From Bugula neritina (taxonomy: Eukaryota > Animalia > Bryozoa), in the NCBI GenBank assembly GCA_964035545.1, contig OZ037769.1, positions 8,103,929 to 8,167,928 of the forward strand: a DNA stretch of 64,000 bases, written 5' to 3'. The notes under the pieces were generated by a model. That model did no database searches. It was not told where the DNA came from and was given only the letters and a program-made list of their open reading frames with translations. Below, in pieces: positions 1 to 48,128 of the stretch; position 1 is the stretch's first letter, and each line of letters starts with the position of its first letter. The position numbers and the translations under genes are program-made.

Positions 1-1182
<1,182 letters not shown>

Positions 1183-1203
1183 TTACGAGCTAGCAATTTG
1201 ATT

Positions 1204-1399
1204 ATAAATAGGTATACGAGAAACATTGTTGATTTATTACTTTATTAGGTAAAGTAATTACACTGATATTTCGGGTACCACTGTACCCATCTTCAGAGTA
1301 GCAATGAAGATGGGTACAGTGGTACCCAAAATATATCAGTGTAATTACTTTACCTAATAAAGTAATAAATCAACAATGTTTCTCGTATACCTATTTATA
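1204..1399. repeat. Near-perfect ~195 bp inverted repeat (foldback) of the Penelope pLTR end
   Basis: 1204-1295 is the reverse complement of 1305-1399 with a ~9 nt spacer. The same sequence ends the PLE at 48382-48477. Confidence 0.92.
1262..1299 (-). ncRNA. Minimal type I hammerhead motif
   Basis: Minus strand reads act CTGAAGA t gggtac agtg gtaccc GAAA ta TC agt. AUAU palindromic stem III; AUC cleavage after 1265. Confidence 0.75.
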
Positions 1400-1409
1400 T
1401 ATATATATT

Positions 1410-1985
1410 TATATACCTTGATTATGATTAATTATGATTAAATATACGAAAAAATATTTCTTGTTTTATTACTTTATTAGCTAAAGTAATTGACTTATAT
1501 TTCGGACACCACTTTGCCCATCTTCAGAGTTACAATGAATAATCAAATTTCAAAAGTTATTACGTTACGTTGGACACTATGCATGACACAACGAATAGAG
1601 AGTGGCAGTTATTGCAAATTATTCAAACTGAAGGAAATAATCTTGCTTTTTATATTACGCAAGTCAAAATTGTGCTGATTTCTTTGCATAAAAAATAAAT
1701 AATTAGAGTTGACAAAATATAGATATCCAAATATAAAAACAACATGAATCAGTGAAAAGTGTGTGAGAGTTGAGTAGTGTAGAGCTTATTGGTATAGTTT
1801 TAGTGGTATGGAGTAATTTTGCTTGTTAACTTGCAGTTTTATTTGTTTAATGTAGAGAGCTTTAGCTAATTTGAGGTGGCGGATTCTTTTAAATGACTGA
1901 TTTAGAACTGTTACATTGTCTATTGAAATGCTTTGGTGGTTAGTGGTGGATCGAGATATGTTGATAATTTTTTGAATTAATGTCA
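1410..1985 (-). mobile_element. Inverted Penelope pLTR copy with GIY-YIG C-terminus (Poseidon/Penelope type)
   Basis: ORF 1786-1986 (ISIDNVTVLN...ALYIKQIK.Q.NKQNYSIPLKLYQ) matches the end of the 46677-48128 ORF. 1410-1720 is nearly identical to 48557-48860. Confidence 0.88.
1492..1531 (-). ncRNA. Minimal type I hammerhead motif (variant B)
   Basis: Minus strand reads aact CTGAAGA t gggca aagtgg tgtcc GAAA ta TA agt. AUA cleavage after 1496. Confidence 0.72.
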
Positions 1986-2480
1986 TGACAGTATTCTCTC
2001 AAAACAACACAAATTTATTCATTGCAAACATGAGCAAAAAGATTAAACAACTTCGAAACAACATTCAAGACCCTAAAGCTCAAAAATTGAACACTGTGAA
2101 GAGCCTACACAGTTTCTTTTCAGTTCAACTTACAAATCAACAGCAAGCTATTGCCAGAGAATTAGATGTACACACTCTTACAAGAGCTAACAAAATTTAT
2201 ATTAAATCAAAACTTGAATCTTTCTACCAACAAATTTCCTCAAATCAGCATCAAGCATCTAAAGATAAACTTGAAGTAATTAAAGGTAAATTCTTAGATA
2301 TACGTATGATCTAACTTTATAAAGATTAAAACACCAAAATATTTTGATGACTCTCCAAAAAAAATTGAAAAATAAAAAAGTTATCACATTAAACAAAACA
2401 AAGGAAAGGGTATACTTTTGTCATGAATAAAAAGGATTACATTAACAAATGTTAAGAAATACTGAAGACACCAAAATTTT
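1985..2480 (+). mobile_element. Decayed N-terminal (pre-RT) part of a Penelope-like ORF
   Basis: FFSVQLTNQQQAIAR.LDVH...KLESFYQQI, then a frameshifted KQNKGKGI..VMNKKDYINKC*EILKTPKF (KADKG-like motif that precedes the PLE RT). Confidence 0.65.
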
Positions 2481-2676
2481 CAACATGTTCCATCCTTTAA
2501 TTTTAAAAATTAGTTGAATATAACAAATTTTTTTTTCCTGTTATTGCAGTGTTATCTCAAACCAATGGTTTGCTTGAGTAAATATGAAACACAATTAAGC
2601 CTTTTTTCTCAGCTTGTTGATGTTCACATGATTTTACAATTAATATTATATTATAAACTGAGTGAGATGCAGCTAT

Positions 2677-5600
2677 TTAAGCATCACAGTTGACAGGTAT
2701 GGATGAGCAATTCTTTACGAGATCCAGTCTAAGCTCTTCAACAAAGATATGGAATGAAGATTGCCAGCCGGTGTAGGCATCAGTGCCATCAAACCCAGAG
2801 CATTGACCAACAGCATAGGTGATGTTGTGACTTCCCAAAGATATCCCGTGACATATTCCACTCACTGAAATATTTAACAAAAATCTGTATAAAGCTTGTT
2901 TGATCAGTTCTTTTTATAATTATTTGCGAATACATATTATACCAATATTAAAACATTACATGATATGGTTGTGCAGATAGTTGCTGTGTAAGTCGAAAAA
3001 AAATAAAGAGCTCAGAAATGAAAAAGTAGAAGCCTGTTCGGAATGAGCATACAGTTCATGTCTTGTATAAGCAACGTATAATTTGTGCCGTCTAAAACCA
3101 TTTACCTTGCATTGGACGGTGCATAGCTGTCTCCAAATTGAAGAAGTATAACCCTTCTATCCTCCCTGGTGAAGTACATTCAGCATTGCCAATTTTAAAA
3201 AACCTGTAATAAATACATATATTGGGTTAACATGTACAGTTTTATTACAATAACTAAAATTCCTTATCATTGAACTATTATTTTCATAAGCTTACCATCT
3301 CCCACAGTTTGAGTACCCATTACCCGATTTAATCTGATGATCTCCACTAGCTGTCAGTCTGAGTCCAGTGTCTGCATATTCCTTCACATAAGTTATGGTG
3401 TACAGATCTGCCACATCCTCTCCTTTATTACTTGCCCAGTAGTGAAATCTCTCTAGATTTCCGCTGTGACTTCGGTACATCTGCCGGTTACGGGATATTA
3501 CTAAAACATTGTATATGCAATTTTGTTAGAGAAGTATCTAATGAAAACCTCTAATAATAAATTGATTTATTACAGTTTATATTTGGGTTATAGATTTGAA
3601 ACAGCAATTAATGTAATATGCCGACTGCTTTCTGCACAATAAATTTAATTCAAACATACAAATTTTTCATTGTGGCAACAGGAAAGCTTGCCTTGTTAAT
3701 TTCGAATTAAATAAAGTTTTTGGAAACTTTCACGTTCTTAGCAGCTTAAAATTTTATACTTGCAGAGCAAATTTTAAACAATTTGTTTTGTTGGCTATAT
3801 GCATGCAGTTTAACTGAAACTATTTTTCATTCGAAAATACTTCTCAATTATAGTAACAAGTTACATTTATTTAAAGTCAAAGCCTATAAACTTAGTTAAA
3901 TAATGCATTCAATAAAAGAAACATACTTTCAATGAAAAAAATCATATTGTTGATTAGGAAAAGCAAATATTTCTACAGAGATATATTAGAAAATTGTATT
4001 CAAATATGTTTGGTAAGACAACTATATTATGTGACTTCTAACAAGAATTGATTTCCACTGCATTGACTTCGTGCATGATCTCTTCTCACTTTTTAATATG
4101 TATACTTAGAGCCTTGAATGCACTATATAACACCAATTGGAGCTCATTTAGAGCACTTGCATGAACAATTTTACTTTGTTATCCGTATTATATAAGAACT
4201 AAAATCTTAAAGTTATACTTATATACATATTAACTATAATATTATGCTTATTAGGAAGTCTATTAGCACCTCCATCAACCACAAGACCTCTCCTCACTTC
4301 TTCAATGTGCAGACGTGAAGGAGAGTTAAATCCACCAGTAACAATTCTTGTAGGTTGATTATAACTATCAATGCATCTCCCAACGTATATTCTAATGGTG
4401 TGTGTTCCTTTAGGCAATATGTTGTCACATATTCCTTCCACTGAAGCAAAAAGTTATGCAAAATACATATTTAGACTTACAGTTATATAAAATGCTGGTA
4501 AAAATTGATTGATTATTAGTGCTTGTCATACAGGGGACCAGCTGCCAAAAATGAAATTCTGTTTAGGCTTTTATAATTGAAATATTTTAAATGACTGGGT
4601 CTGATTTTGACTCATTAAATGCTCTTTTAATCAGTTGCAACAATAAAAATGACAGATTCACAACCATTATATAGAACTTTAGTAAAAAGCATAATCCATT
4701 GTTAATTTTTTAAAATAAATTTCATGAAACTCGGTACATATAATTGCATTAAAATTTTTATTTGTGTTGCCTATCAAAAACAAATAGTTCATAATGGCTA
4801 ACATAGCATCTTATGTAGCTAGAATAAATTTATCTCCAGTAATAGCTAATTTAAGCTAGCTTAAATTAGTAATCAACTATAACTAGTCGTTCACTCAAAC
4901 ATATAGCTTATGTAGTTGCTATACGAGACATAGCTTGATTACTGAGTTTGTATGCAATGTATCCCATGGCTGATCCGATACTGTAAACAAGCACTAATAA
5001 TAACTTAAGACGTGTTACTATACAAAAAACGAAATCAAAACCACAACAACACCCCTTATACTATCAAACATTTTGCCATTTGCCATTTGCCATTTTGCAG
5101 GTTTAAAAGCAAAGTTAGATCCATGGTTTAAAATATCAAATTTACAAAAGTACGCTGCTAGTTTCATAAAACGATAAAACAAGACCTAGCCCAGAAGACC
5201 GGTAGCCTAATAATTATAGTCTAATTATATACATCAACTGACAAAACAAATAATCTTTACCATATGAAAATTACCAACGGAGAGCTTATATATACTGCAC
5301 ATCAACAAATTGCTAGGGATTACAAAAAAAAATCAAAACACACTTCAAGAAATGAACTTAAAAGCTAAACATCGTTGCTTTGAAAAAAGACAATGTAATA
5401 TTTACAAGTTCCGCTTTTCCTATGATGCCTCCAGTATTTGTAGTTATTAGGTGAAGTGTGAGATATTACATAATCAAGTTGGGGAGAGCACTCACTGTCT
5501 TCTATCTTCACAAACCTGTACAAATGTGAGCAGCATCTAAGAATATACTAAAACCACCAACACACATAGAAATTGAAAAATGTTGAAATACAACTATAAA

Positions 5601-8600
5601 TTTTTAAATTCAAACTGCTAAATTTTTTAAACGACAATTGAAGCTCAAAATGGTGCCTGTTAAATGGTAATTGGCCAAAATGAACAAACTTTCACCAGCT
5701 ACATTTTACACTCGCCATGCATGCAACATTCTTTGGTCGCAGTCCGTGCAGCAAATCAGCATTGTGTGATTTTAAAGTACTTTCATTACAAAATATAAAT
5801 GGCTTATATAGTGTTAAATTCTCAAAAACCTCAGTTAATCACCTTGACAATTGAAATTGTTTTTTAATTTAGACACAATATATAGAAATAAATGTTGTAC
5901 CAAAAAGAATTCAATATAGTAGTTTGTTTTTTTATTCAAGAAAAAAAGCCATTTATAAACTTTTTAAAAAATGTGATAGACCAAACCTGTTATACTGTTT
6001 AAAATTTTGTGTGACCTAAAGCCTGAAACATGTATGAAATTGAGGTTGCTTTAACGGTATAATGCACTGGCAAAAAACTGCCAATAATGATCTATGATCA
6101 TGACAAACATATATATATGCATATTTTTGAGTGATTTCCTAAAAAAAGTTCCTTTAAGATTGTAAGATTACTATAATGAGAAGGAGGTTACTTGAAATTT
6201 TCCTAAAAAAGTCTTAAAACTTAATAAATTAAAAGTGTATATATATAGCAGCTCAACAAGTTGTAAAAATAAAGCAGTGTGAAATAACTAAGAAATACAA
6301 ACATAATTTATATAAATAATATAAGTAATAAATTATGCTAGTAAAAATACCTAAAGGTGTCACCTAAACTTTTTTATTACTTTATTATCAGTGTAAAAGT
6401 CACTGTTTAAAAATTATTACCTAAGGCATGGAACTTACCACCTGGCGCAGTAAGGTGGTGCTTTTGTATCAACAACTACAGATGCCAATGCGCTGTACTT
6501 TATTCTAAGACTTGTGTTGTCTGAAACTTTGTCGTATGTCACTTCCTGTGTAAATAAAATGCTAGCTTAACAAATAGATTATGCCGCTTGTAACTATATA
6601 TTTTTGTTTGAATATAGGATATTTAATTTTTATTCGAAGTTTATTAATCCGAAAATATATTATAATGCATGCTTCGAACACTGTGTAAATACTCCAATAA
6701 TAAAAATATTTTATTATAACACCGCTGTTGTAAAAGTCTGATAAAAAAGTAAGTCATGTTTCTTTCTTATCTTGGAGAGCAGTTGCAATGCTAGTAGCTA
6801 AAGTGCTGGGCTAGTAAACACAGGGTGGTAGGTTCAGATCTTGGTAAAGATAATTGGTGCTGCCAGAAAAGGCATTTAACGTCATAATTTTCTATGTGTC
6901 ACAGTAAAAGCAAGCCTTTAATCTCTCAGGAGTGTTTTCATTGGTGATGATTTTAGAAATAAGTGCGAGGATGAATACAAAATTATTTAAAACAACAAAT
7001 ATTTAATTAAACTCTTTTTAGTTGCCTATAGTTGAGATAATTTTAGCGCTATGGCTTGCCTTTAATAACACAATCTAAGGTTTCAAAAAGATTGAAAAGA
7101 AATTGTGACATTTGAAAATAAATTTGCCAAGATTCAATTGTTAGAATAGCTGCTACAGCAAAAAACAAAATATATTGTTGGGTACAAAGTCACACGTCCT
7201 TTAACAACTTTTTATAATTTTATAGTTTAATTTTTACTATCAAGTTTGATTTAAAAGCTGAAACTAGAAAATGGTATTATTCAGCCAGAGCTCATATTTT
7301 TGTGTGGTACGTTAGCTTAAGTGAATAAAGGTTTATGCATGCAGGAATATGTATAGATCATATAGTACCTTAATGAGGATTTCGTCAGCATGAAGATCAA
7401 CCGTCTGATCAACTTCTTCATTCCAAGTCTCATACATGTAGTTGAACCCATTGTGGAGAGGGCAGAAAAGAAGGTTTTCTTCTAAAACATATTGGTGAAG
7501 GATATTTATCTACAATATCCGATTTTCATCAAGCTGATAAATACGACTACCTAATATTCATTATAAAGTTGCTAAAGCAGCTGGCTAGTCAGCTAAATGA
7601 ACTTGTAAATTAACTTGATTGCTAACATATTCTTAAGATTTATCATTTGCCGGCAATACTATAAGAAAAGTTGCGTGACATATATTTTATTTGTTTTAGC
7701 TAATAGACTTAGCAATTTATGAATAATTAATCTGCTGCTTAAGCTTGAAATCAATAACAATATCAAATTTATTTTTTTAAGATATTGGCAGTGTTCCAAG
7801 TGAGTTTTACCACAATGTATATACACTGAATGGTTAATGGCACAAAGGACAAAGAAACACAAGTTTCTGGTGTTGATAATGATAGAGCTCAAACTCACTA
7901 CATCTGTCATGGTAATGTTGGGAACTTGATATATTGTGATTATTTATGATAATTTCCCAATGTAATTATAATTGACTTTGATTTTGCTAAATTTAAATTA
8001 CGAATATTTTGTAAAGTACTTTTAAGAACTGTGATGCTAAAAGCTAGAAAAAAATTTTTAATTTGCTTTATCGCAACACTTTAGAAACTAATTAGAACTA
8101 AATCAAAGAATTATTTGTCTTCACAGCGTTATATCTAATTCAGAAAGCTGCTGCATACCTAGAGTTACTTGTGGTGGCACCATCTCCATAATCAACATCG
8201 TTCTTGCAGAGTTCCATCCAGAGAGAGCATCACTGGTTCCATAACCATCACATGGGCCGACTACTAATTCTACTACTCTGTCACCAGCCTCCAGTCCATA
8301 GCATGTACCATCAACTAAATATTAGTTGATTTAAGTGACGCTAACATTACCTACTGCAACAAATTTGCAGAAATCAACACCAATTCTAGTTAGTCTCTGT
8401 TTTTATAAGTAATGCTCTTTGGTTTATAAAATTACATTGCATCTGGCATCTTAAAAATAAAAGTGGACATTTAAAGTTTTTAAAAACTTATTATCTTGTT
8501 ACATAGTCTTTTAACAGTGGTTTGTTTCATGAACAGCATATTATATTGCATTTCACTAAATAGTTCTTCTAGGAAAACAATCAATATTTAAAATAGTGTT

Positions 8601-11600
8601 GTTATACTAAACTTACTATCTATTGCTCGATGTAAATCTCCTGTAGTAGCACTGTAATCTAACACCTCAATAGTGTCTGGGTTAGAGCACTTGTTACCAT
8701 CGAATGTCAAGTACCAGTGGTGACAAAAGTCAACTATATTAGCATGGCCTCTGACAGCCATGTGGATAATAACTCTCAGTCCCGAGTCTGCCCTAGACTT
8801 TGGGTATGTGGCTATCTGAAAATATTGTTAACATAATCTGACTAACAGCTTCTTAAATCTTAAGTCAACACAAACCTAGTTTTGTATAAATAATGAAATA
8901 TATAATATATTATATATTGACGCAATTGCTTTAAATATAAATTCATTTTAGTTACTTTTTAAAAACAACAACTGGATGTTTTCAACAAAATTGTGAATTA
9001 AACCTAATACAGTTGCTCAGTACAAACTATTGCTATAATATTTTACAATTGTACATCTTACCATTATGATGCCTTCATCTGTGATATCTGGAAGATCTGT
9101 AGACCAATAATGTCTGATGTTTGTGTATTCATTTTTCAACCCACATTCAGTTGATTCTTCACCTGCTGTGGAATTATTCTCAAGTAATTACTAGAATCAA
9201 GATGGTTATAAAATAGACCTAATGTTATTTTACATAAATGCAATCTAACTTGGTGATTGTGCTTTTTTCAAACATAGAAGCTTATTCATAACTATAATCT
9301 ACAATTATTGCTATATGAAACGGGAATATATATACACTGTTGTTTTAATATTGTTACTTCGGTTTTGTGTACAGGCATAGCTAGACTGCTATGATATGTA
9401 AGATCTTGAATCACAGTGAATTTTAACATTGCAAAAAGAGTGAGAGATTAAAAAACCTTAATTATTTTCAGGAGAACATATTTCTACTTTATTCATAAAA
9501 TAGTGTGAGTTAATTGAATGCATCGATGCTTTGTTGAAGCACAATTATTTCATAGGTTCCTGTGATCTTGTATTGTGGTTAAACATGAGAATTCACCTAC
9601 CTAAGCAAATCGGGTTTTCCAAGACAGTCTCTCCACATCCAACCATGCAGATTTCTAAATTTGAACAATTTCTACCACTGCAGTTTGTCAGCTATCAAAC
9701 AGAAAAATAGACAAGTATTTATGTACATCACAATTGACAAATATATTCAATCAGTATATTAAATCAATAAACTAAAAATATACTTTGTGTTTAATATTTC
9801 TAAATATAACAAATATTTATAATTTATATTTGCGTGCATGTTAGCAGTAGCCCACAATAAAAGACTGAATAGAAAAAAGTATATTACAAAATATGTTTAA
9901 TTACTGGCATACTGTCTTTAAATCATACAAAAGAGATAAAATAATAAATTTATAAAAAGACTTTTAATATGTTTTATTATGCTGGTTTGATTTTAATTAT
10001 TGTTTAAAAACTGCGTAAATCAACAAGCTAAAATATTATTTGAAATGTAGTCTGTATACTCACTACACTACAGTTGTTCCCAATAAATTAGTAGTATAGC
10101 AGTATTTTACCCCGAAAAAGGTACCAAATAATTTTAATAAAATGAAATACAATCTAATATAAAAGTTTAAAGGCACCATCACCTCTGAAATTGTTGAGGG
10201 AAATTTAGCTTATTTAAATTTGATTGGGGTTTAAAGCTTACCTCCCCTGTTGCCATTAGCTCCATGAAATATCCGTCAACGGAACCATTTTTAGAAGATA
10301 AATTCAAAGTGGAAGTTGACCCATTCAATTCATAACACATTCCTAAAACAGCTATGATGCGTCATAATAGATATGAAATCACCAAACAAATATTTTAGGT
10401 GCATCATAAAGATGCATAATTAACCTGATTTCTTATTTGCTAGTAAAAAAGAAATTGAAATAAAAGTATCGCATTAGCATTATTCTCATTTGTTTATTTA
10501 TTATAATCATTTTAAGCTATACTTTAAAACATTTTGTTAAGTGCATACATATTTTATTAAATGAATCCATTGGACCCTATATAATATTAAAATTTCTTAG
10601 TTCACAATTTACACATTTCACACAAATTGCTACTTAAGTAACCAGTAACATATTATGCTACATTTATGTAATATAATAAATAAGATATAATATATTATGT
10701 AATATATTAAAATAATATTTATTGTATGATGAATTTGTAGAAAATTCTGAAAACAAAGTTCTAGGCAGCTGGCAACATACTTTTGTGCCATTTAATGTTA
10801 AACTATAAATCATTGAGTGACGAAGACTTTTTGCATTTGCAAATATTAATATTTAAATATTATTAGGAACTTTGCTGATGAAAATATGTGTGTGATTTAA
10901 TAAAAGTAAGCTTATAAAAAGGTCTGCAAAAGGCAAAACATGTTCTTCTCAAATCACAATGCAAATTTAGTTTTATTATAGAACTCATTATATATATGTC
11001 ACAATGTATGCAACAATTCAATGCACACATTTTATTACATGCTTATATAATAACAAACACTGTTGTTATATATGTAGTTATTGACTTGATATATATAATT
11101 GATGATTATTTTATAATATGAAAACAAAATAGCTTTTTAATGCAACCTTAGACATCAAACAATATTTTAATAATGCAGTTGATGTACAGAAAAGTGATTA
11201 TGTGACAAAGAAATTAAAACTAAAATAATGATCCATTAAGCATAAAATAGATGTCAATTGTTGTCAAACTTAATTGCAAAGACAAAAACAGCAAAGCTTA
11301 TATTTGAATTATTGATTTGTTCAAAAGTTTAAGCATTTGTTATAGTATCATGTAACAATTAAAAATAGCTATAGGCAATTTGACTTACATGCAGACGCAA
11401 ACAATCCACTACTACTTGTGTATATATCCACACACGGTTATAGAGGGTTGCTTGAGTCTGTAAGTCAAAATGCCTAGCTATTCCTAATTGTTACATGATA
11501 TTAATTAAATGGCTGTTGAGAGAAATATTTAAATTTTATCAACTTATATCTAGAACAAAATCACTTTATTTGTGTTGTTCAAAATATTTCTTTTACCAAT

Positions 11601-12356
11601 ATAGTTTCTAATTTCTAAACAATTTATTAAAACTGCTATCTTTTACCTGCATTGCTTCTAAAAATAGCATTACATTGCAAAGGGAAATTTCTCCAGCAGT
11701 TGACTAAACACTCTGTAAGACTTCTGGTTGATGATTTTCTGGTTATAAGAGAGCTCTTAGGGTTGAGATACTGGTCTTTTGATACACTGACAGAGTTTCC
11801 ACAGTCTGGTAAATCTACAAAATATTATGTGCAGGATACCAAGCTTAGCATTATCACAGGTTTATTCTATATGATTTTATTATTTTTAGAACATATAATG
11901 TATTATACTGATATATGCAAATAATTTATATGAAAACAATATGATTTTCTAGACTCAGTAGAATAACTATACAATAGGTTGCCACACAATACATTCAATG
12001 TTTAAACATTTTAACAGCAACTGCAGTATTATTTAGAGTAAGTTAAAAATTTATGTTGATTAACATGTTACTGAATCTAATCTTGTAGGAAATAATCATT
12101 TAATTATGCCAATGAATTCTGTAGTCTGCATGGCACAAAATGAATACCAATAAATCTAACTTTTTAGGTTGTTTAAAATTTACAATGAAAACAAAACCTA
12201 AATTTTAAAACTCATATTAAGCTGCTTTTCCCATTGATAACTTTATAAGTAATATATAATGACAGAAACACACTTACCTAATATACCCGTCATAGCTAAA
12301 TGAAATGATGATGAACATAACCAACTGATGAACAGTGTCGTACTTTTCAACTTCAT
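2677..12356 (-). CDS. Secreted protein, 628 aa: signal peptide + PAN/Apple domain + Cys-rich linker + 3 tandem CTHRC1 C-terminal-like domains (no collagen repeat)
   Basis: 14 coding exons with GT-AG boundaries and matching phases: 12278-12356, 11647-11814, 10242-10342, 9601-9691, 9062-9162, 8617-8815, 8159-8314, 7369-7481, 6439-6545, 5406-5515, 4270-4440 (weak donor), 3296-3500, 3106-3203, 2677-2864; total 1887 nt with no internal stop. N-terminus MKLKSTTLFISWLCSSSFHLAMTGIL. PAN: SLTECLVNCWRNFPLQCNAIFRSNAGMCYEL. Each repeat has YxKxxxxT/S(G/S)LR...CxxWYxxxxxxxC..IE...HR...xGxCxGL..G...VGxC...DAx(T/S)GWNS...IEE, as in the CTHRC1 C-terminal domain. Confidence 0.85.
6775..6900 (+). mobile_element. 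Degenerate tRNA-derived SINE in intron
   Basis: A-box-like tagtagctaaag and B-box-like ggttcagatctt, followed by a GGTGCTGCCAGAAAAGGCAT core-like segment. Confidence 0.4.
11346..11500. mobile_element. MITE-like foldback element in intron
   Basis: ~45 bp terminal inverted repeats: tatcatgtaacaatt..aatagcta..ggca.tttgacttaca / tgtaagtcaaaatgcctagctatt..taattgttacatgata. Confidence 0.7.
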
Positions 12357-13714
12357 CCTAAAATACATGAGTCAACTATTTTAGCTTATGTTATTCAATA
12401 TAAAAGTTTACATATATTATATTGATAATTGCTAGTGCTATAATAATCTTTTTTTTTATAATATTTTAGTAATAACATATGAACATTCTAACATAGCTAG
12501 AATTTTGAATAGATTTATATATAGATGTTAATAACTCATTTTCTTTTTAGGATAACTTGGAGCACTTGGGCATAGTTTAATTTGTTTGGTTATGCATAAT
12601 TTATCTATTTAAATTTTTTTTAAAAATAATAGTGGTTTTGGAACATGAGAAAAAACATTAGAATTTAAATTTGTCACAATAATTATGATATTTATAATTA
12701 TATCATAACAATTTATGTTATAATTATTTTCTAAACGAGCTACTATAAAATTGATTGAATTATCACAGTATCTATATAAGGTTTGAGATTTACCAATAAA
12801 ATGACAATAATTGAAATTTTCTAAATTACTTTACAGAGATTTTTTGCAATATATTGAATATTTCAATGCATAAATTAAACAAAAGCTGACCTTTTTCTAA
12901 CAAACCTCTCAACTTTAATTTATTTGTTATAACTGATATGTGCTAGGTCTATATATATATAGTGTCTAATAATGCAACAGTAAATAATTGACAGAAACTT
13001 GTTTATTAGTTTTTTCTCAATCATATTAAACAATAAATTCACCTTAATGTACTATGCAAAAATAAAAGGCTCTAATCAAAATTGTTTAATCTGGTAATTT
13101 TTCTATATTTTGAAAAATTCAATGTTTTACAAAATATATGACTCTATGATATATCAACAAGAATGTGAAGAAATAATGCGCTTGTTGCTTACTTATGTAT
13201 AATGAAAAAATACAAACACAAAAATTAGGTATACATTAAAAAAGACACCTAAATATTAAACTAAGCATTGAATAATAAAAAAAATTGTTTATAAAACAGT
13301 TTAAAGAAGTTTATAGATTGTAAACGCATAGTGAAATACCTGACTCGACAATTAAGAGAAGGCAGACATAAGAGCTGGTTTAATGTGTGTAGACCAACTG
13401 CAAGCACCTTCACCAAGAAACTGCAACAGGAATATTGATTTCTATCTGCTGTCGTAATTTCAGTATCTATTGATTGTTTGCATATTTTATAACAACATTA
13501 CTCCACAGTATAATATTGCAATAGCATAATATTTATATATACATACATATCATATTATTTTATGTTTCTGTATTCTGAACAATAATTATTGATGTGTGAT
13601 ATTTTGCTAGTAAATGTTTTTATTTTGAAGATTTGCAGTTTTTGTAATGACTGTATTTGATGTCTTATACTCACTAACCATTAACACTGTGATTATAGTC
13701 TGGCAGAACTGGGG

Positions 13715-16700
13715 GTTAGGTTCGCAATCTCGGATAAAGTTTTTTTCTCTTTTGATTACTTATCTTGAGGGTCCAGGTAGATGTTTCCAGGTGGGTGTGG
13801 ACCTGTCACCCTTGAGCATTTCGAGAAATCCAAGATAGCCGCCAATTATGAAAAAATTGTAATCCAGTCAGCATAAAGTCTGTATTATGTTGCAAAAACA
13901 AAATTTTTTTGATGATTGAAAAATATGTGCATTTTTAGAATGAATATGTGCCATGCCAGTAAAAAGGAATCAAAGTAAAGAGCCAAGAGACATGTTTCTC
14001 AGCTCAAAAATCGGAATTGCTTCAATAAAACATCACATATGGTGCAGAGAAATAATACAAGGTTTTTGAATAACTGTTTGGACACTGGACAGATATATAA
14101 AAAAACATTGCTTATTGCCAATGAATAGAAAGTGAAAAAAGATACAGATGCAGCATATTGCTCAGCTAAAGTTAAAATTGAACATATATATAATCGTACA
14201 AATGCGACAAACTTTCACTCATGTTCATATTAAACACCTTTTTCATTTTTTGCTATCATTAGCATTTGTTAGAAAGAAATGTTAGTTCATTGCAGCACAC
14301 TCCTGTTACTGCTTCACAAGGGCAGAACTCTGTGCATAGGATAGATGTACTAGAATAGCCATATCGTGTTGTTTTGCATGATTGTTGGCTTCCACAGGAG
14401 CATTTAATGAATTTGGGACAATTTACTTTATTTAGTACACATCAGCAGATTATGATCAAATATTTTGAAGTTTGCTCAAAATTCATGAACACTTACTATA
14501 TGGGGTAATAGTATTTGCTGATTCTATCTATGCATAACAAAAATGACTGGGAAGAGGTCCTGCAACATTTAAGCGCGGCGTCATCGTCATACGAGCTAAA
14601 TATACATTTGTGAATCATCACGGCCTATATAATATCCCAATGTAATAATAAATTAGGAATAGACATAGAAAATAATGCATAACTGGAAATTATTCAGTTT
14701 TATTTGTTAAAATTTTGATAGTTTGAGGCAAAAATCTATATACAATAGCAGCTAAATCGTAAAAAATCGCCAAAAGCTAGAGTCGTCGAGTGTACACCAA
14801 ATTAACTAACATGATCCACTTCATAATACTGTCTGGTGTAAGCACAACATCATTTTCTACTCCTTTTGGGAAAAGAGATTCTATTAGATTCCCTATCACC
14901 TACCAATGTTCTAGTGGGTTTAATGCCGCAGTTTCATATGGCTACCTGGAGGTGTGCTCTGGTGACATTGTCCAATAGCTTCATCTGTAGGAGGCAAAGT
15001 ACATAAGTTAAAGGCACATCGCAAATAGCATTGCTGACCTTGGTTTCCCAAGCCTTTTGTCTTGTAGATGTCATGGAGGAGCACTTTGCATAATTGTAGC
15101 AACATAGCATAAACTTGGTAGCTTTTTATGAATAGTCATCCTGAAAAAAAGCACTAGTGTCACCAAATCACACTTTCCTTCTACCAAGACATTTAGTATG
15201 ACTCCCTTTCCAATATTTTACATTGTTGCCCCTGAGAGGCCATAGGAAGACAGCAAATTGTTCATTATAGGGCTTTGTCTCGAACTTTCTCACTTAGTAT
15301 ACGATGTGGTCCAGGATGAGTAGCAGTTTTGCAGGGCACCAAGTGCTATCAGAGAGTGTCATCTGATTCTATTGTCAACATCTTCATCTGAGAAGCCACA
15401 TTTCAGTATGCCATCCTTCACTGTATCTATTAACCTTTTTTTGCCCCCCCCTCTCTTTCTCTTTCTCTGTATCTTCATCTCAGCCACCATTATAATATCT
15501 TCCTCCGTATCTCTTCTGCGCACATGTTCATACCATTGAAGGGGTCTCCTCCTCATGTCTATTGCAATGGCTTCTATTTTCACCTCCTCTTTTATATTAT
15601 CATTTGTTACATGGTCTTCCAATTTATATTGTAAATGTGTTGAAGCATCCTCATCTCAGTTGCACTTATCTGCTTCAATATTGACAAGAGCAACTGGGTG
15701 GCATCATTCTTTGAGTGGGTCATTGCAGAGTTCAATTTTCCATTTGACAGACTCCCTGTCTTTTGAATCAGAGTGGATTCTTGATTGCATCTCATCCTTA
15801 TCAGTAGTGAAAGCATTTATTTCAGACTTATTTCTGATGTCACTGAGGCCCTACTGTATCTTGTTGCATGCAGAAATGCTGTACACTCACACCTAGAGAG
15901 TTTTAGATTTAGTGGTAATGCCAATAATTCCCTCTTGTTGTGACTAAATCTCACGAAGGTCACCTCAATGGTCATGTCTGACCAGATGCCGTCAAGCTGG
16001 CCGCGTTTATGATGCATTGTGTGGTTACCAGCCGCGAATTCAATCCTTACATCTTGTGGCATGATCTCCATGCTATGCAGATAGTGCATTTCCTCTTCCA
16101 TTGCTAGGTGTAAGGCCCAGTCTTCCTCTTTAACAACTATGATGTGGGTGTTGATGGTAAAAATTGGTCCAATAAAGCACATGGCCTACAGTTTTGCTAT
16201 TCTTGAGTTCTCTACAATTTTAATCAACATCTTTTCAAAGTCCTTCATGCTAGTGATTACACTTTCATGAAGACTGGCTCTAACAGCTCTCCCACCAATA
16301 TTCTCCGACATCGTACATTCTGGAAAAACTTTTCTAATTAGCATTTTGGAGAAACCACCAAAAGTAAAATTAACTACTTCCACCAAATCTGTTTCAGCCA
16401 TTAGTGTGCCAGTGCACCCAACATAGGTCATTAAAAGAGGAGAAATTAATAGTAAACATTAATGAAAGGAGATTGGTATGAAAAAAGGTAGGGAACCACT
16501 GTTTTAATAGATATATTACTTGCCCCATCATAAAAAACTGTTGACAAATGCTTTTAGAGGAAAATTCAAATGTGCTGATTGCAGAAATAGTTTTCGAAAG
16601 CAAAAATGTCAATATTTAGATAAATGATGTGTCAATAATAAAGCAATTAAATTATGTTAAGAAGCCATGGTGTTGTGTTATTAAGGTTTTTGACCCCTTT

Positions 16701-42624: not shown

Positions 42625-45600
42625 GGCTGGACTATGATTAAAAATTAAGAAATTGTGGTCAATTTGGCCATATTTGGATTTTACTATGCATAAAAACTCT
42701 AAAATTTCCAGATTCGAGTGATGTGATTCTTTTTGATATTCTACTTTTCTTTCTATTAAAATTGTGTATTTAAAGTTACCCCTTTGTTGCAACTGGTGTG
42801 AAAAACAAAAAAAATGCAGCCATAATCACTAACTTTAGCACCATTGTTAACTGTTTTCAACTCGGCATTCTCAGTTGCACTGTACAGCATTAGTTTCAGA
42901 AAAGCCTACTTTACTAATGGGCAGTGTATAACACCTCTCAGTAAGCGCATTGAGGCAAAACAAAGATAATTGATTTAGCATAGTTTTGTCGGATTTTATT
43001 ACCCTGACCCCGTGACCCGCGATTCACTTCATTTATTGGCTGTGCTTATCGCGTGATCTGTGACGCACATCCTGTTTGCCAAAACGAACAAAGAAGCTAC
43101 ACGCAATATTCCAAACTGCCAAAACAATCTGATAATTTACCATCAATCCTTCATCTAGATCTTCTACAACCGGTGAAAATAAAGAGAAGACATATTTGAC
43201 TTTATATTTATCAACATTTTGTTTTACGAAGTGCCGTGATTTACTTATTTTGACATTAGTAATATTACATAATATTTATATTCGTACCGACTCGTTATAT
43301 AAGTCTCTAACATAGCAGCACGTATACTACAGACACAGTAAACATGCCTAAGGTTAAAAAAAGGCAGTTTCGAGGAAATCAGTACAGAAAAGCTGACCCA
43401 GTACTAGATATTACTACTAGTACTACTACTACGACGCCTGCAAGTGCTACGACGCCTGCAACTGCAAGTGCAACGACGCCCACAACTACGCCTACTACTA
43501 GACCACCCATGACGATTACTACTACTACTACTACTACTATTGCCGGCACCGCTACGCCAGTTATCGCTACTACTATTAGTAACACTAATGTAACTAACTC
43601 TACTGCACATCTAAGTGCATCTACAAGCTTTTCAGTTAGTACTATGGACTTTCAATTGGAGCCCCAGTCTGCTGCATCTGACCATCAACTTATACCACCG
43701 ACTGCCTCCAGCTCTTTGAGTCTGACTAGTGATGCTACACCTACAGTTACCGGCACTACTCCTGCTGCAACTGCCAGCTCTGCTAAACTAAATGATCAGC
43801 TAAGTACTTCAAATTTCTTATTTAGTTCTGCAAATTCTCAGCCTGACAGTATTATAGTGCAGACTAAGTTAGTTTTAGAACTTATGGGTAGGTTGTCATC
43901 TGGTAGTATTGCTTGTAAAGATCACCCTGCTATGTCCTTGCGAATTAGTGTAAAATGCCATAGTGGAATTGTACCAGCTTTTGATTTTACCTGTTCTGTT
44001 TGTGGTGTTCTTATTGAAAGTAGTGTAATGAGTGATCGTGATGTAGATCATAGGTTTTCTTTGAATACTCGGTTGGCTTTTGGTACAACCTTGGCAGGTG
44101 GGCATAGAAGTACTGCTGCAACTATTTCTGCTCATCTAGGTTTGCCCCCACCTGTCGCTTTTAGTGAGTGGGCCAAGGATGTAGAGCGACTTGGTAACAT
44201 TACTAAGGAGCTAGCTAGTAAGTCAATGGACCAGGCTGCCAGGGAAGCTGCTAGTATGAGTAACAGTAGTGATATAACAGTATCTTGTGATGGTACCTGG
44301 CAGCGTAGGGGCTTTAGTAGTAAGAATGGGGTAGCTACTGTTATTACCCATTCAGTAGGAAAACCAGGTAAAGTAGTTGATACTGAAGTTCTCTCTAGTT
44401 ATTGTTTTACATGTGCCAGTCATAAAGATAGTATACCACCAGAGCATAGTTGTGTCAAAAATCATGAGGGTTCAGCTGGTGGTATGGAGCCGGTAGGTAT
44501 GGTTAGAATTTTCAGGAGGTCAGTCGAGAAGAGAGGAGTACGGTTTGTAAAATATTTAGGGGATGGAGACTCCAAGTCTTATAGTGCTGTAAGTAAGGCC
44601 CAACCCTATGGCCCAGATGTTGTTGTTGAGAAACTTGAATGCGTAGGTCATGTGCAAAAGCGAATGGGCAAGCTTTTATTAGATAAAGTGCAGCAATGTA
44701 AGGGAAAAGAGTTTTATTGGGAAGGCCGTAAGTATAAAGGTATAGGAGGTAGTGGTAAGTTGCATAAAGCTGCTATAAAGAGAATTCAGGGTCATTATGG
44801 AGCAGCTATTAGGAATAATGTAGGAAACTTAGAGGGTATGAAAGCAAGCATTTGGAGAATATGGCATCATAGGAATAGGAATCATAGCTCATGTGATAAT
44901 TCTTGCCCGGCAGTAAATGGTAGTGGTGATGGTAATTCGAATAGTCTCCCACCTTTTGTACTAGAAGAGATAAAACCGGTTTTTGAAGCTCTTACAGCCG
45001 ATTCTCTGCTTTCAAAATGCTTGCATGGGGGTACACAAAATAATAACGAGTCTTTTCATAGGATAATTTGGTTACTTTGCCCTAAAGTGCAGTTTGTGCA
45101 GAAGCCTAGGTTAGAACTTGCTGTCAACTGTGCTGTCTTACAATTCAATGATGGTAGTACTGCTCTTGCTGCTGTTTATGATATTTTAGGAATAACGATT
45201 GGAAAACAGCTGGTAATGCACACCCACAAAAAAGATCTGCAGAGAATAAAGGCTTCCAAGAGACGGGCCACCTATCAAAGAGCAACAATAGCCAGACGAC
45301 CTGACCGGAGTGACTACCAAGCTGGAGCTTTTTAGAGATGAAATTTCAATAAACCCTCAACTTTGAAGATAAGTTAACTTTGTTACTTCGCCCCCAAAGT
45401 GAAAATTTTACAAAAACCTAAGTTTATTTTTGTTGTCAGCTGTTCTGTCGTATAATTCAATGATAATAGTACTGATTTTGTACCTGTTTACTTTGTTTTA
45501 GGAACACTGATTGTGAAGCAGTTTGCCATTTATACCCACAAAAAGATCTTCTAATAATAGTGAGTTCCCGCCACAAAGCCCAGCAGTCTGGCCAAAGTAT

Positions 45601-46676: not shown

Positions 46677-48128
46677 TTGGTACCATATAATATAGCAATA
46701 TACCTATATATATATATGGCCAAAATACACAAACTCAAACAAGGAGATGGTATAGAGAAGCTACAAATGCGACCAATAATTTCTAACATAGGCACTGCAT
46801 CATACCAACTTGCGAAATACCTGGCCAAAATGCTAAAACCACTTAGTGAATCTGAAAGTAATATCGAATCAACCGATAGTTTTCTTACATATATACGGCA
46901 ACTTCATATTCCAGCAAACCATCAACTGATATCATTTGATGTTGTTTCCCTCTTTACTTCTGTACCACTTGACTACACGATTTCAGCAATCATAACTGAT
47001 ATTTATGAGAAACAACGAATCCAAACAACTATACCAAAAAAGAAAATGATAAACTTACTCAACCTTTGTACAAAACAAGTTCACTTTACTTTCAACGATA
47101 TCATTTATACACAGACGGATGGTGTTGCTATGGGATCTCCTCTAGGACCAATAATTGCGAATATATTCATGACAAAACTAGAACAGAAAGTATTACCAAA
47201 ATTGAATTCAATGTCACCTTGGGTGAGATACATAGATGACACATTTGCAACCATAGACCCTGATTATATTAACACAACACTCAACACACTTAATAATTTT
47301 CATCCTAACATAAAATTTACACACGAACTAGAAACCAATAAATCACTTTCTTTTCTGGATGTTACAGTTTTGCGACACAATAGCTCAGTGGAAACCACAG
47401 TATTCCGCAAGCCAACACATAACGATACATATTTACATTGGAACTCTTTCTCACTAAAAACATGGAAGCTAAGCACACTCAAGTCACTAGTATTAAGGGC
47501 TAATAAAATCTGTTCTACTCCAGCACTTAAGACCCAAGAACTTAACTATATTCGAAATGTTTTTGAACATAAAAATGGTTACCCTAAATATGTAATAGAG
47601 AAAACTATTAACAACATTGGTGACGGACTACTTAGTGAAAAAGACAACAGGAAACACATTTTACTCCAGCTGCCTTATAAAGGAGTAACAGGAGAAAAAC
47701 TAATCCGCTCCCTCAATAAATTAATTACAGACTCTTTTTCAAATGAACTCAATGCCCGGATTTTATTTAAAGGAACCCCTTTAAGTTCACATTTTAATCT
47801 CAAAGATAAAACCAATAAAGAACACATTCACAACTTAGTCTACAAAATAACCTGCCCTGAAGCTACCTGTCAACAAACATATGTAGGCGAAACCGGACGT
47901 CGCCTATCACACAGGATACATGAACACTGCCATGACATCAATTCCAAAATTTATCAACACTCTTCCACCACTAATCATGGAAACATATCAATAGACAATG
48001 TAACAGTTTTAAATCATTCATTTAAAGGAATCCACCATCGAAAAGTAGCCGAAGCTCTCTACATTAAACAAATAAAACCGCAACTCAATAAACAAAATTA
48101 CTCCATACCACTAAAACTATATCAATAG
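46677..48128 (+). CDS. PLE reverse transcriptase + GIY-YIG endonuclease (N-terminally truncated)
   Basis: AKIHK, RPIISNIG, SFDVVSLFT, GVAMGSPLGP, RYIDD, FLDV, RKPTH and VYKITCPEATCQQTYVGET...RIHEH. Homology starts at about 46713. Confidence 0.9.
   Translation: MVPYNIAIYLYIYMAKIHKLKQGDGIEKLQMRPIISNIGTASYQLAKYLAKMLKPLSESESNIESTDSFLTYIRQLHIPANHQLISFDVVSLFTSVPLDYTISAIITDIYEKQRIQTTIPKKKMINLLNLCTKQVHFTFNDIIYTQTDGVAMGSPLGPIIANIFMTKLEQKVLPKLNSMSPWVRYIDDTFATIDPDYINTTLNTLNNFHPNIKFTHELETNKSLSFLDVTVLRHNSSVETTVFRKPTHNDTYLHWNSFSLKTWKLSTLKSLVLRANKICSTPALKTQELNYIRNVFEHKNGYPKYVIEKTINNIGDGLLSEKDNRKHILLQLPYKGVTGEKLIRSLNKLITDSFSNELNARILFKGTPLSSHFNLKDKTNKEHIHNLVYKITCPEATCQQTYVGETGRRLSHRIHEHCHDINSKIYQHSSTTNHGNISIDNVTVLNHSFKGIHHRKVAEALYIKQIKPQLNKQNYSIPLKLYQ

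What the first reader, a model, noticed from the sequence alone, without database searches (positions are those of the whole stretch)
2677..12356. Collagen-less secreted protein with a PAN domain and three tandem CTHRC1-C domains
Seen: 14 phase-compatible exons give a 628-aa ORF of signal peptide, PAN/Apple, Cys linker and three highly diverged repeats, each keeping the CTHRC1 C-terminal signature (C..W.....EC, HR, G.C.G, VG.C, GWNS-like, IEE). There is no Gly-X-Y stretch. Known: vertebrate CTHRC1 has a short collagen triple helix followed by one such globular domain and acts as a secreted trimer, linked to Wnt/PCP and TGF-beta modulation. Inference: three domains on one chain could form an intramolecular pseudo-trimer that needs no collagen helix, with PAN as a protein/glycan targeting module. 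I do not recognise this architecture as described.
Basis: partly seen in the sequence, partly recalled or inferred. Interest (0 to 1): 0.85.

Follow-up and report, generated by a model that had tools for sequence, protein, structure and literature searches.

The report
Collagen-less triple CTHRC1-head secreted protein
This is a real 14-exon gene of a bryozoan-type animal for a secreted protein that has no collagen stalk but carries three different CTHRC1 head domains on one chain. In models of two distant relatives these domains pack like a C1q trimer, so one chain probably does the job of three.

Summary
On the minus strand, 14 GT-AG exons (12356 to 2677) join in phase into a 629-aa ORF, or 628 aa with a tandem acceptor. 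It comprises a leader, a Cys-rich N-terminal module, a 6-Cys linker and three diverged CTHRC1_C domains. No Gly-X-Y run occurs in any frame.

- **Domains:** Pfam PF25815 hits exons of all three repeats. Repeat 2 is marginal.
- **Gene integrity:** Two 93%-identical paralogs keep every splice site and all 27 Cys, have no exon indels, and give Ka/Ks of about 0.3. A Bugula neritina contig holds two genes with the same exon order.
- **PAN:** No window exon hits Pfam PAN. The module is homologous (hhalign 92%) to that of Lingula relatives, which pass PAN_1 and model as apple domains.
- **Pseudo-trimer:** AlphaFold models of two relatives superpose over about 336 residues on engineered single-chain C1q and adiponectin trimers (Z 25-27).

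The window's own spliced protein could not be folded or searched as one piece, and no RNA run exists.

The family has at least 23 genes here and sits uncharacterised in databases. A 2020 paper notes it only in a footnote. The scan found it before on other DNA of this genome. I class it as a new variant of a known kind.

The parts
12278..12356 (-). Exon 1: start codon and N-terminal leader (aa 1-27), probable signal peptide
   Evidence: ATG at 12356 and a gtaagt donor. Hydropathy is moderate. Relatives have clear leaders. No signal-peptide predictor was available.
11647..11814 (-). Exon 2: first two thirds of the PAN/apple-like module (aa 27-83, Cys 31, 62, 66, 74)
   Evidence: No Pfam hit. 23 copies occur in the genome. 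hhalign against the Lingula PAN region gives 92.4% probability, E 5e-7. Ka/Ks is 0.07-0.11 for the N-terminal part.
10242..10342 (-). Exon 3: end of the PAN-like module (aa 83-116, Cys 85, three N-x-S/T sites)
   Evidence: Phase-compatible join to exon 2. Kept without indels in two paralogs.
9601..9691 (-). Exon 4: Cys-rich linker (aa 117-147, 5 Cys; a sixth lies in exon 5)
   Evidence: it aligns with the 6-Cys linker of the relatives. 48-50% identical copies lie in the B. neritina contig.
9062..9165 (-). Exon 5: start of CTHRC1_C domain 1. A tandem NAGNAG acceptor at 9165/9162 explains 629 versus 628 aa
   Evidence: The local family HMM places domain 1 at aa 154-294.
8617..8815 (-). Exon 6: middle of domain 1 (C..W...C, HR)
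   Evidence: PF25815, 31.6 bits, profile positions 27-81.
8159..8314 (-). Exon 7: end of domain 1 (G.C.G, VG.C, GWNS) plus the short linker to domain 2
   Evidence: PF25815, 39.0 bits, profile positions 96-137.
7369..7481 (-). Exon 8: start of domain 2
   Evidence: Phase fit. A 41% identical copy lies in the B. neritina gene. No Pfam hit alone.
6439..6545 (-). Exon 9: domain 2, second piece
   Evidence: 38-56% identity to B. neritina exons. No Pfam hit alone.
5406..5515 (-). Exon 10: domain 2, third piece (W...EC, HR)
   Evidence: No Pfam hit alone.
4270..4440 (-). Exon 11: end of domain 2 (G.C, VG.C, GGFNS, IEE) plus the linker to domain 3
   Evidence: PF25815, 26.3 bits, profile positions 95-136, just under the 27-bit cut-off. 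The local family HMM gives 76 bits for the whole of domain 2.
3296..3500 (-). Exon 12: start of domain 3 (no N-terminal Cys, as in domain 3 of the relatives)
   Evidence: PF25815, 25.9 bits, profile positions 1-57.
3106..3203 (-). Exon 13: middle of domain 3
   Evidence: PF25815, 17.7 bits, profile positions 53-82.
2677..2864 (-). Exon 14: end of domain 3, a short 2-Cys tail and the stop codon (2679-2677)
   Evidence: PF25815, 49.2 bits, profile positions 94-137.

Best explanation
The locus is an intact gene for a secreted, glycosylated extracellular protein. It is one of at least about 23 such genes in this bryozoan-type genome. Behind a leader peptide the protein has a small PAN/apple-like module, a 6-Cys linker and three diverged CTHRC1_C domains joined by linkers of only about 10-13 residues. 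It has no collagen stalk.

**Inferred mechanism.** The three domains fold back on one another into a single C1q/TNF-like three-lobed head. Canonical CTHRC1 builds this head from three identical chains tied by a collagen helix. Here it is built from one chain as a fixed A-B-C 'heterotrimer'. Assembly then needs no collagen helix, the stoichiometry is fixed, and each lobe can diverge on its own.

**Likely role.** The PAN-like module and the head most likely act as extracellular binding surfaces. The gene family has expanded in tandem, and among recent paralogs the changes cluster in loops while the PAN part is tightly conserved. I therefore think a diversified recognition or adhesion role is more likely than a single conserved signalling role.

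**Shown:** the gene structure, the domain content, the absence of collagen, purifying selection, and the same exon order in Bugula neritina.
**Inferred from models of relatives:** the trimer-like packing and the apple fold.
**Unknown:** the ligand and the biological role.
For: - **Gene model:** 14 GT-AG exons in phase giving 629 aa.
- **Domains:** PF25815 hits on exons of all three repeats. No G-X-Y run in any frame.
- **Paralogs:** Two copies at 93% DNA identity keep every splice site, have 0 exon indels against about 100 gapped intron bases, intact ORFs and all 27 Cys. Ka/Ks is 0.31-0.33 overall, 0.07-0.11 in the PAN part and 0.2-0.6 in the domains.
- **Other species:** A B. neritina contig holds two tandem genes with the same exon order, exon 2 through exon 14. 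A 611-aa ORF with PAN_1 plus three domains lies on an intronless 2.6-kb run contig, so it is transcript-like. Lingula RefSeq models have the same architecture.
- **Models:** P0003 has pLDDT 81 and pTM 0.72. It matches 5HZF and 5HKJ at Z 26.6 and 26.3 (336 aa, rmsd 3.3-3.4), 4DOU at Z 26.2, 5KCA at Z 24.5 and 4ZCH at Z 22.8 (Foldseek TM by target 0.55). P0015 has pTM 0.75 and matches 4DOU and 5HZF at Z 25.7.
- **Domain tree:** Position-1 domains of bryozoan, Lingula and P0015 form one group (support 92). Labels cluster by position (3 changes against 11.7 when shuffled). An unrelated 9-domain protein resolves as (ABC)x3.
- **Linkers:** 10 and 13 residues between the domain envelopes.
Against: - The window's own spliced product was never folded or searched as one piece, so the packing is transferred from relatives that are only 30-45% identical.
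- AlphaFold may place any three C1q-like domains in a remembered trimer. A complex test with the three Lingula domains as separate chains gave no verdict.
- There is no RNA evidence for this species.
- The window's exons do not hit Pfam PAN.
- Domain 2 is very diverged: it sits on a long branch and only one of its exons comes near the Pfam cut-off.
- Bryozoan domain 3 does not group with the Lingula domain 3 in the free tree, although joining them is not rejected (p-AU 0.46).
- An Oscarella protein has four domains plus collagen, so tandem copies are not always in threes.
- In mussel proteins with three gC1q domains, each domain binds ligands when expressed alone (PMC5519582).
Confidence: 0.68

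Rival explanations
1. Beads on a string. The three CTHRC1_C domains do not pack with each other. Each one trimerises with domains of other chains, giving multivalent oligomers or networks, or each acts as an independent binding unit.
For: Tandem domain duplication often just raises valency; this view is taken for multi-gC1q proteins in the review PMC10672478. The three gC1q domains of mussel HcC1qDC6 each bind ligands when expressed alone. The separate-chain complex test gave no verdict. An Oscarella protein has four domains plus collagen.
Against: Two independent models pack the domains as one trimer, with Z 25-27 to single-chain trimers and pTM 0.72-0.75. The linkers are short. The domains show position-specific orthology, and another organism has an (ABC)x3 array. 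Copy numbers of 3 or 9 dominate among database relatives.
Confidence: 0.17
2. Annotation artefact or dying gene. The 14 open pieces belong to more than one transcript, for instance a PAN gene plus separate single-domain genes, or the locus is an untranscribed recent duplicate.
For: There is no RNA run for this organism; the one run that holds the stretch is DNA and shows no joints. The gene sits in a cluster of very recent duplicates. Exon and intron identity between paralogs are similar, 95-96% against 94.5-95%.
Against: Only exon 1 offers a start and leader, and all phases fit. Three paralogs keep the ORF, the splice sites and the Cys, with Ka/Ks about 0.3 and no exon indels. The same exon order occurs in two B. 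neritina genes. Relatives have single ORFs with the same architecture, one of them on an intronless contig.
Confidence: 0.05
3. Same job as vertebrate CTHRC1. The protein is a conserved co-factor of Wnt/PCP or TGF-beta/BMP signalling and of collagen-matrix remodelling, merely built without collagen.
For: It shares the CTHRC1_C domain. Leclere et al. 2020 (PMC7058181) argue for a conserved signalling role of Cthrc1 across animals.
Against: At least 23 tandemly duplicated genes, with paralog differences concentrated in loops, fit diversified recognition better than one conserved ligand. The domains are only 30-40% identical to canonical ones. No functional data exist for any member.
Confidence: 0.1

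Closest known systems
Vertebrate and cnidarian CTHRC1 / Cthrc1 (signal peptide, short collagen triple helix, one CTHRC1_C domain; Leclere et al. 2020, PMC7058181)
   Same: Secreted, with the same C-terminal domain family (PF25815) and its Cys and GW/EE motifs. The C1q-like head is presumably a three-lobed unit.
   Different: No Gly-X-Y stretch at all. Three diverged domains sit on one chain instead of three identical chains. It has an extra PAN-like module and a 6-Cys linker. It belongs to a large tandem family. By the paper's definition (CTHR plus C-terminal domain) it is not a Cthrc1 gene.
Lingula anatina uncharacterised proteins LOC106162620, LOC106180315, LOC106178942, LOC106165752 (P0003, P0151, P0152, P0006/P0157), and Bugula neritina KAF6026444.1 'CTHRC1' (P0010)
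   Same: The same architecture: leader, PAN_1, Cys linker and three CTHRC1_C domains. Domain 1 is orthologous by position. The B. neritina locus has the same exon order.
   Different: Only 30-50% identical. None has been studied. The B. neritina model is incomplete: it skips the domain-2 exons and the PAN exon.
Engineered single-chain trimers of the C1q/TNF superfamily (scC1q globular head 5HKJ/5HZF, sc-adiponectin 4DOU, scAPRIL-BAFF-BAFF 4ZCH)
   Same: Three jelly-roll domains on one chain, joined by short linkers and packed as a trimer. Models of two relatives superpose on them at Z 21-27 over about 336-348 residues.
   Different: Those are laboratory constructs of other families with about 7% sequence identity. 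This one is natural and ancient.
Bivalve C1qDC proteins with three tandem gC1q domains (HcC1qDC5/6, CfC1qDC-2; PMC5519582, PMC10672478)
   Same: Natural, secreted, collagen-less proteins with three tandem domains of the same superfamily. They come from tandemly expanded families and are linked to pattern recognition.
   Different: The Pfam family differs (C1q, not CTHRC1_C). They have no PAN module. The papers do not discuss intramolecular trimer packing. They arose independently.

Membership tests
CTHRC1_C domain family (Pfam PF25815) | Match to the PF25815 profile at or above the 27-bit gathering score, in each of the three repeats | tested here: met
   Tested exon by exon. Repeat 1 scores 31.6 and 39.0 bits. 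Repeat 3 scores 49.2 bits, plus 25.9 and 17.7. Repeat 2 scores only 26.3 bits, on its last exon. So the feature is met for repeats 1 and 3 and marginal for repeat 2. Repeat 2 scores 76 bits against a family HMM I built locally.
Cthrc1 sensu Leclere et al. 2020 (collagen-like family) | A collagen triple-helix (Gly-X-Y) stretch N-terminal of the C-terminal domain | tested here: not met
   No (G-X-Y)x3 run in the ORF and no (G-X-Y)x4 run in any of six frames of window 1-16000.
PAN/apple domain (Pfam PAN_1, PF00024) | Match to a PAN profile at or above the gathering score | tested here: not met
   No Pfam hit at E <= 10 for exons 2 and 3 of the window. A profile of 17 bryozoan exon-2 copies found nothing among PDB sequences. 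The domain is split over two exons that I could not join for a search.
PAN/apple domain (Pfam PAN_1, PF00024) | Homology to proteins that do pass the profile, and an apple fold | tested here: inconclusive
   hhalign of the exon-2 family against the N-terminal module of the relatives gives 92.4% probability, E 5e-7, over 36 columns including three Cys. The relatives score 20.6-29 bits on PAN_1 against a cut-off of 21.4; five of the six pass and P0157 at 20.6 bits falls just under. Their models match FXI/prekallikrein apple domains at Z 8.7-9.3 and SML-2 at Z 8.0-8.4. This is transitive evidence and was not tested on the window's own product.
C1q/TNF-like trimeric head, single-chain form | Three jelly-roll domains packed around a pseudo-threefold axis | tested here: inconclusive
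   Met in AlphaFold2 models of two relatives, with Z 25-27 to single-chain C1q and adiponectin. Not tested on this gene's product, which has no reference for the spliced sequence. The separate-chain complex test gave no verdict.
Secreted protein | Cleavable N-terminal signal peptide | not testable with these tools
   The N-terminus has a basic start and a moderately hydrophobic stretch. The protein has 8 N-x-S/T sites and 26 Cys outside the leader. No signal-peptide predictor was on hand.

The most novel reading that the evidence does not exclude
The triplet of CTHRC1_C domains is an ancient, obligate A-B-C unit: a natural single-chain heterotrimer. It would have been fixed before bryozoans and brachiopods split, and it recurs as (ABC)n arrays in other eukaryotes. 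In lophophorates it has been expanded into a diversified family of PAN-tethered extracellular recognition proteins, an immune- or adhesion-type repertoire built on the CTHRC1 head in the way bivalves built one on gC1q.
Probability: 0.3. Interest if true: 0.7.

Novelty: new variant of a known kind. Interest (0 to 1): 0.55.

Why it matters
CTHRC1 is much studied in fibrosis, cancer and Wnt/PCP signalling, yet no structure of its head has been published and the way it assembles is only inferred. A natural protein that encodes the whole three-lobed head in one chain has three uses:

- It would give a monomeric, collagen-free and probably easy-to-express form of that head for structural and binding work.
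- It shows that evolution reached the 'single-chain trimer' design that protein engineers built for C1q, adiponectin and TNF ligands.
- It points to a large, unstudied family of secreted proteins in bryozoans, brachiopods and probably phoronids, whose biology (immunity, adhesion or matrix) is unknown.

The scan has met this family repeatedly on other stretches of the same genome, so this locus is one more member rather than a new discovery.

Tried and rejected
- **RNA evidence.** The look-up of sequencing runs found one run only. Its contigs cover introns and exons alike with no joints, so it is DNA. There is therefore no transcript test.
- **Open segment 11490-11362.** It looks exon-like, but it cannot be joined in phase without a stop or a poor donor. 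Exon 2 joins exon 3 directly and gives a normal PAN Cys pattern.
- **Pfam PAN on single exons.** No hits. A profile of 17 exon-2 copies against PDB sequences also found nothing.
- **The search for homologous proteins.** An alignment of relatives and P0010 as queries added nothing new; both were limited by the word index. No full-length bryozoan model exists in the libraries, only ORF fragments and the incomplete P0010.
- **Mixing exon pieces into a full-length alignment.** MAFFT scattered them, so the alignment was not used.
- **P0015 against the own genome.** No match, so it is not a close relative.
- **Complex prediction.** The three Lingula domains were run as separate chains. The result was 'no answer': score 0.44, but a control with chain 2 replaced scored 0.49. 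This is not evidence either way.
- **ESM Atlas.** Nothing usable by features. By shape it returned only single-domain CTHRC1 clusters and unrelated PAN proteins.
- **Literature.** No hit for the Lingula LOC ids, PF25815, or tandem CTHRC1 domains.
- **Left out by rule.** The joined spliced protein was not sent to any search, fold or complex tool. All such calls used single exons by reference, or relatives.
Full report
**What is there.** The region is AT-rich (about 30% G+C) and the coding signal lies on the minus strand. I listed every AG/GT site around the open segments and derived a 14-exon model: 12356-12278, 11814-11647, 10342-10242, 9691-9601, 9165-9062, 8815-8617, 8314-8159, 7481-7369, 6545-6439, 5515-5406, 4440-4270, 3500-3296, 3203-3106 and 2864-2677. 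All 13 introns are GT..AG with pyrimidine-rich acceptors and all phases fit. The ORF is 629 aa plus stop.

A tandem NAGNAG acceptor (9165/9162) accounts for his 628 aa. One exon-like open segment (11490-11362) cannot be joined in phase and is not needed. Exon 2 joins exon 3 directly and gives the Cys spacing seen in the N-terminal (PAN-type) module of the relatives.

The product has 27 Cys (26 outside the leader) and eight N-x-S/T sites. It has no Gly-X-Y run, and no (G-X-Y)x4 run exists in any of six frames of window 1-16000, so no collagen exon is hidden.

**How the spliced model was handled.** The joined sequence was never sent to a search, fold or complex tool. It was assembled only inside local scripts that read window.fa by coordinates. 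Those scripts covered the frame check, Ka/Ks, domain boundaries against an HMM I built locally from relatives, and the domain tree.

**Domain content.** Pfam CTHRC1_C (PF25815, cut-off 27 bits) hits exon pieces of three separate repeats:
- Repeat 1: exons 6 and 7, at 31.6 and 39.0 bits.
- Repeat 2: exon 11 only, at 26.3 bits.
- Repeat 3: exons 12, 13 and 14, at 25.9, 17.7 and 49.2 bits.

Repeat 2 is the most diverged. It scores 76 bits against my local family HMM, compared with 124 and 129 bits for repeats 1 and 3. The gaps between domain envelopes are 10 and 13 residues.

**Is it a working gene?** No RNA run is available. The single run that holds the stretch covers introns and exons evenly and shows no joints, so it is DNA. 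Indirect evidence is good:
- The gene has two full-length paralogs at 93% DNA identity, 70 kb and 240 kb away. Both keep every splice site and have no indel in any exon, while introns carry about 100 gapped bases. Both have intact 1890-nt ORFs and all 27 Cys.
- Ka/Ks is 0.31-0.33 overall, 0.07-0.11 in the leader/PAN/linker part and 0.2-0.6 in the three domains.
- A Bugula neritina contig (GCA_010799875.2) carries two tandem genes with the same exon order, from the PAN exon to the last exon, at 33-64% amino-acid identity. The annotated product there (KAF6026444.1 'CTHRC1', 321 aa) simply skipped the PAN and domain-2 exons.

**Family size and organism.** The genome (216 Mb) has at least 117 CTHRC1_C exon hits, of which I counted 69 domain C-termini by hand. 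It has 23 copies of the PAN-type exon. Most lie in clusters on contigs C5 and C9, with smaller groups on C3 and C6. This implies at least about 23 genes of this kind.

The organism is inferred to be a bryozoan related to B. neritina, but not the same species as the sources I could compare. A metagenome contig carrying a close homologue matches at no more than 80% DNA identity.

**Relatives elsewhere.** I searched 1.84 billion representative proteins with a profile of the three last-exon pieces. Multi-domain proteins came out on top. Several Lingula anatina 'uncharacterized proteins' (603, 596 and 594 aa among them) have PAN_1 plus three CTHRC1_C domains. So does a 611-aa ORF on an intronless 2.6-kb contig of a public run, which is transcript-like.

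Tandem CTHRC1_C domains also occur in other proteins:
- Symbiodinium proteins.
- An Oscarella protein with collagen plus four domains.
- An anonymous 1395-aa protein with nine domains.

**Domain tree.** In the tree, the position-1 domains of the window gene, B. neritina, Lingula and the anonymous transcript form one group (support 92). The window's domain 2 joins a Lingula-type domain 2 (support 88) on a long branch. Labels cluster by position, needing 3 changes against 11.7 when shuffled.

The nine-domain protein resolves as three clades holding domains 1/4/7, 2/5/8 and 3/6/9. That is an (ABC)x3 array and speaks for the triplet as the unit.

Bryozoan domain 3 falls elsewhere in the free tree. 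Joining it with the other domain 3s is not rejected (p-AU 0.46), and holding the whole family as one clade fits slightly better than the free search.

**PAN.** No window exon reaches any Pfam PAN model, and a profile of 17 bryozoan exon-2 copies finds nothing among PDB sequences. That profile does align to the N-terminal module of the relatives, with 92.4% probability and E 5e-7, including three conserved Cys. The relatives score 20.6-29 bits on PAN_1 against a cut-off of 21.4. Their modelled modules match apple domains of factor XI and prekallikrein (Z 8.7-9.3), Sarcocystis SML-2 (Z 8.0-8.4) and the HGF N domain (Z 7.3). I call the window's module PAN-like by homology, not a tested member.

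**Pseudo-trimer.** I ran AlphaFold2 on Lingula P0003 (38-row alignment, pLDDT 81, pTM 0.72) and on the anonymous P0015 (42 rows, pLDDT 79, pTM 0.75). Both gave all-beta domains with high confidence, and low confidence only in the leader and linkers.

Both models superpose as a whole three-domain block on engineered single-chain trimers:

| PDB entry | P0003 model | P0015 model |
|---|---|---|
| 5HZF / 5HKJ, scC1q head | Z 26.6 / 26.3, 336 aa, rmsd 3.4 / 3.3 | Z 25.7 / 25.3 |
| 4DOU, sc-adiponectin | Z 26.2 | Z 25.7 |
| 5KCA, Cbln1 | Z 24.5 | Z 23.7 |
| 4ZCH, scAPRIL-BAFF-BAFF | Z 22.8 | Z 21.0 |

Single C1q/TNF-type domains reach only Z 5-7. Foldseek gives TM 0.53-0.55 normalised by target for the same entries. 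A beads-on-a-string model could not align over all three domains at once.

There are three caveats. These are relatives only 30-45% identical to the window gene. The predictor may reproduce a remembered trimer. A complex test with the three domains as separate chains gave no verdict.

**Likely function.** This part is inference. The protein is probably a secreted binding protein whose head is a fixed A-B-C heterotrimer on one chain, with a conserved PAN-like module as a second binding or anchoring surface. Among the three recent paralogs, the 64 variable residues cluster in a few loops at equivalent positions of the three domains. The clearest is the loop between the VG.C and GW motifs. The PAN part is nearly invariant. 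Together with the tandem expansion, this resembles recognition families such as bivalve C1qDC proteins more than a single conserved signalling co-factor. With only three sequences, this is a hint and no more.

**What is known.** Leclere et al. 2020 (PMC7058181) define Cthrc1 as CTHR plus the C-terminal domain and model the head as C1q-like. [quoted passage not shown]

Bivalve proteins with three tandem gC1q domains are known and linked to immunity. The HcC1qDC6 paper does not use the word 'trimer', and I found no discussion of intramolecular packing in the passages I read. I found no paper on tandem CTHRC1_C proteins, the Lingula loci or PF25815.

Earlier notes of this scan describe the same family on eight other stretches of this genome, with the same reading. 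I took them as leads and re-tested the points above myself.

**Verdict.** This is a new variant of a known kind: a natural single-chain form of the CTHRC1 head. It is present but uncharacterised in public databases, and this locus is one of many copies.

Noticed in passing
window 43344-45335 (+): An intact 663-aa ORF with a strong Mutator-like transposase match (PF20700, 202 bits). It is probably a MULE-type DNA transposon inside the gene cluster.
   Followed up: partly
window 46677-48128 (+): A 483-aa open frame with a reverse-transcriptase domain (RVT_1, 43.8 bits). It looks like a retroelement fragment next to the transposase.
   Followed up: partly
window 9162-9165 (-): A tandem NAGNAG acceptor (cacagcag) at the start of exon 5. 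Either site keeps the frame and the two products differ by one Ala (629 versus 628 aa).
   Followed up: partly
window 11362-11490 (-): An exon-like open segment in intron 2 with a perfect gtaagt donor. It cannot be joined in phase with its neighbours, so it would mislead a gene predictor.
   Followed up: yes
L028:8851-26913 (Bugula neritina VXIV02002276.1): Two tandem genes with the full PAN, linker and three-domain exon series. The deposited model KAF6026444.1 (321 aa) covers only part of the first gene, and the second gene is not annotated.
   Followed up: partly
L029:55-4242 (JGI 3300009028) and L030 (SRR1922582): A 1395-aa ORF on intronless contigs from an unidentified eukaryote. It has nine CTHRC1_C domains, which group in the tree as (ABC)x3.
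   Followed up: partly
window exons 6, 7 and 11-14; product aa 172-209, 241-278, 417-443, 522-564 and 592-594: Amino-acid differences among the three 93%-identical paralogs cluster in loops at equivalent positions of the three domains, while the PAN part is almost invariant. Synonymous divergence (Ks about 0.10-0.12) exceeds intron divergence (about 0.05).
   Followed up: partly
G000:C5:8442583-8442918 (-): In a paralog of the same cluster, a CTHRC1_C domain (profile positions 14-137) lies in one 133-aa open frame. This suggests loss of the introns that split the domain in the window gene.
   Followed up: no
G000:C3:26057543-26131702: CTHRC1_C hits repeat with a spacing of about 34.1 kb, three times over. 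This is a very recent tandem segmental triplication, or possibly an assembly duplication.
   Followed up: no
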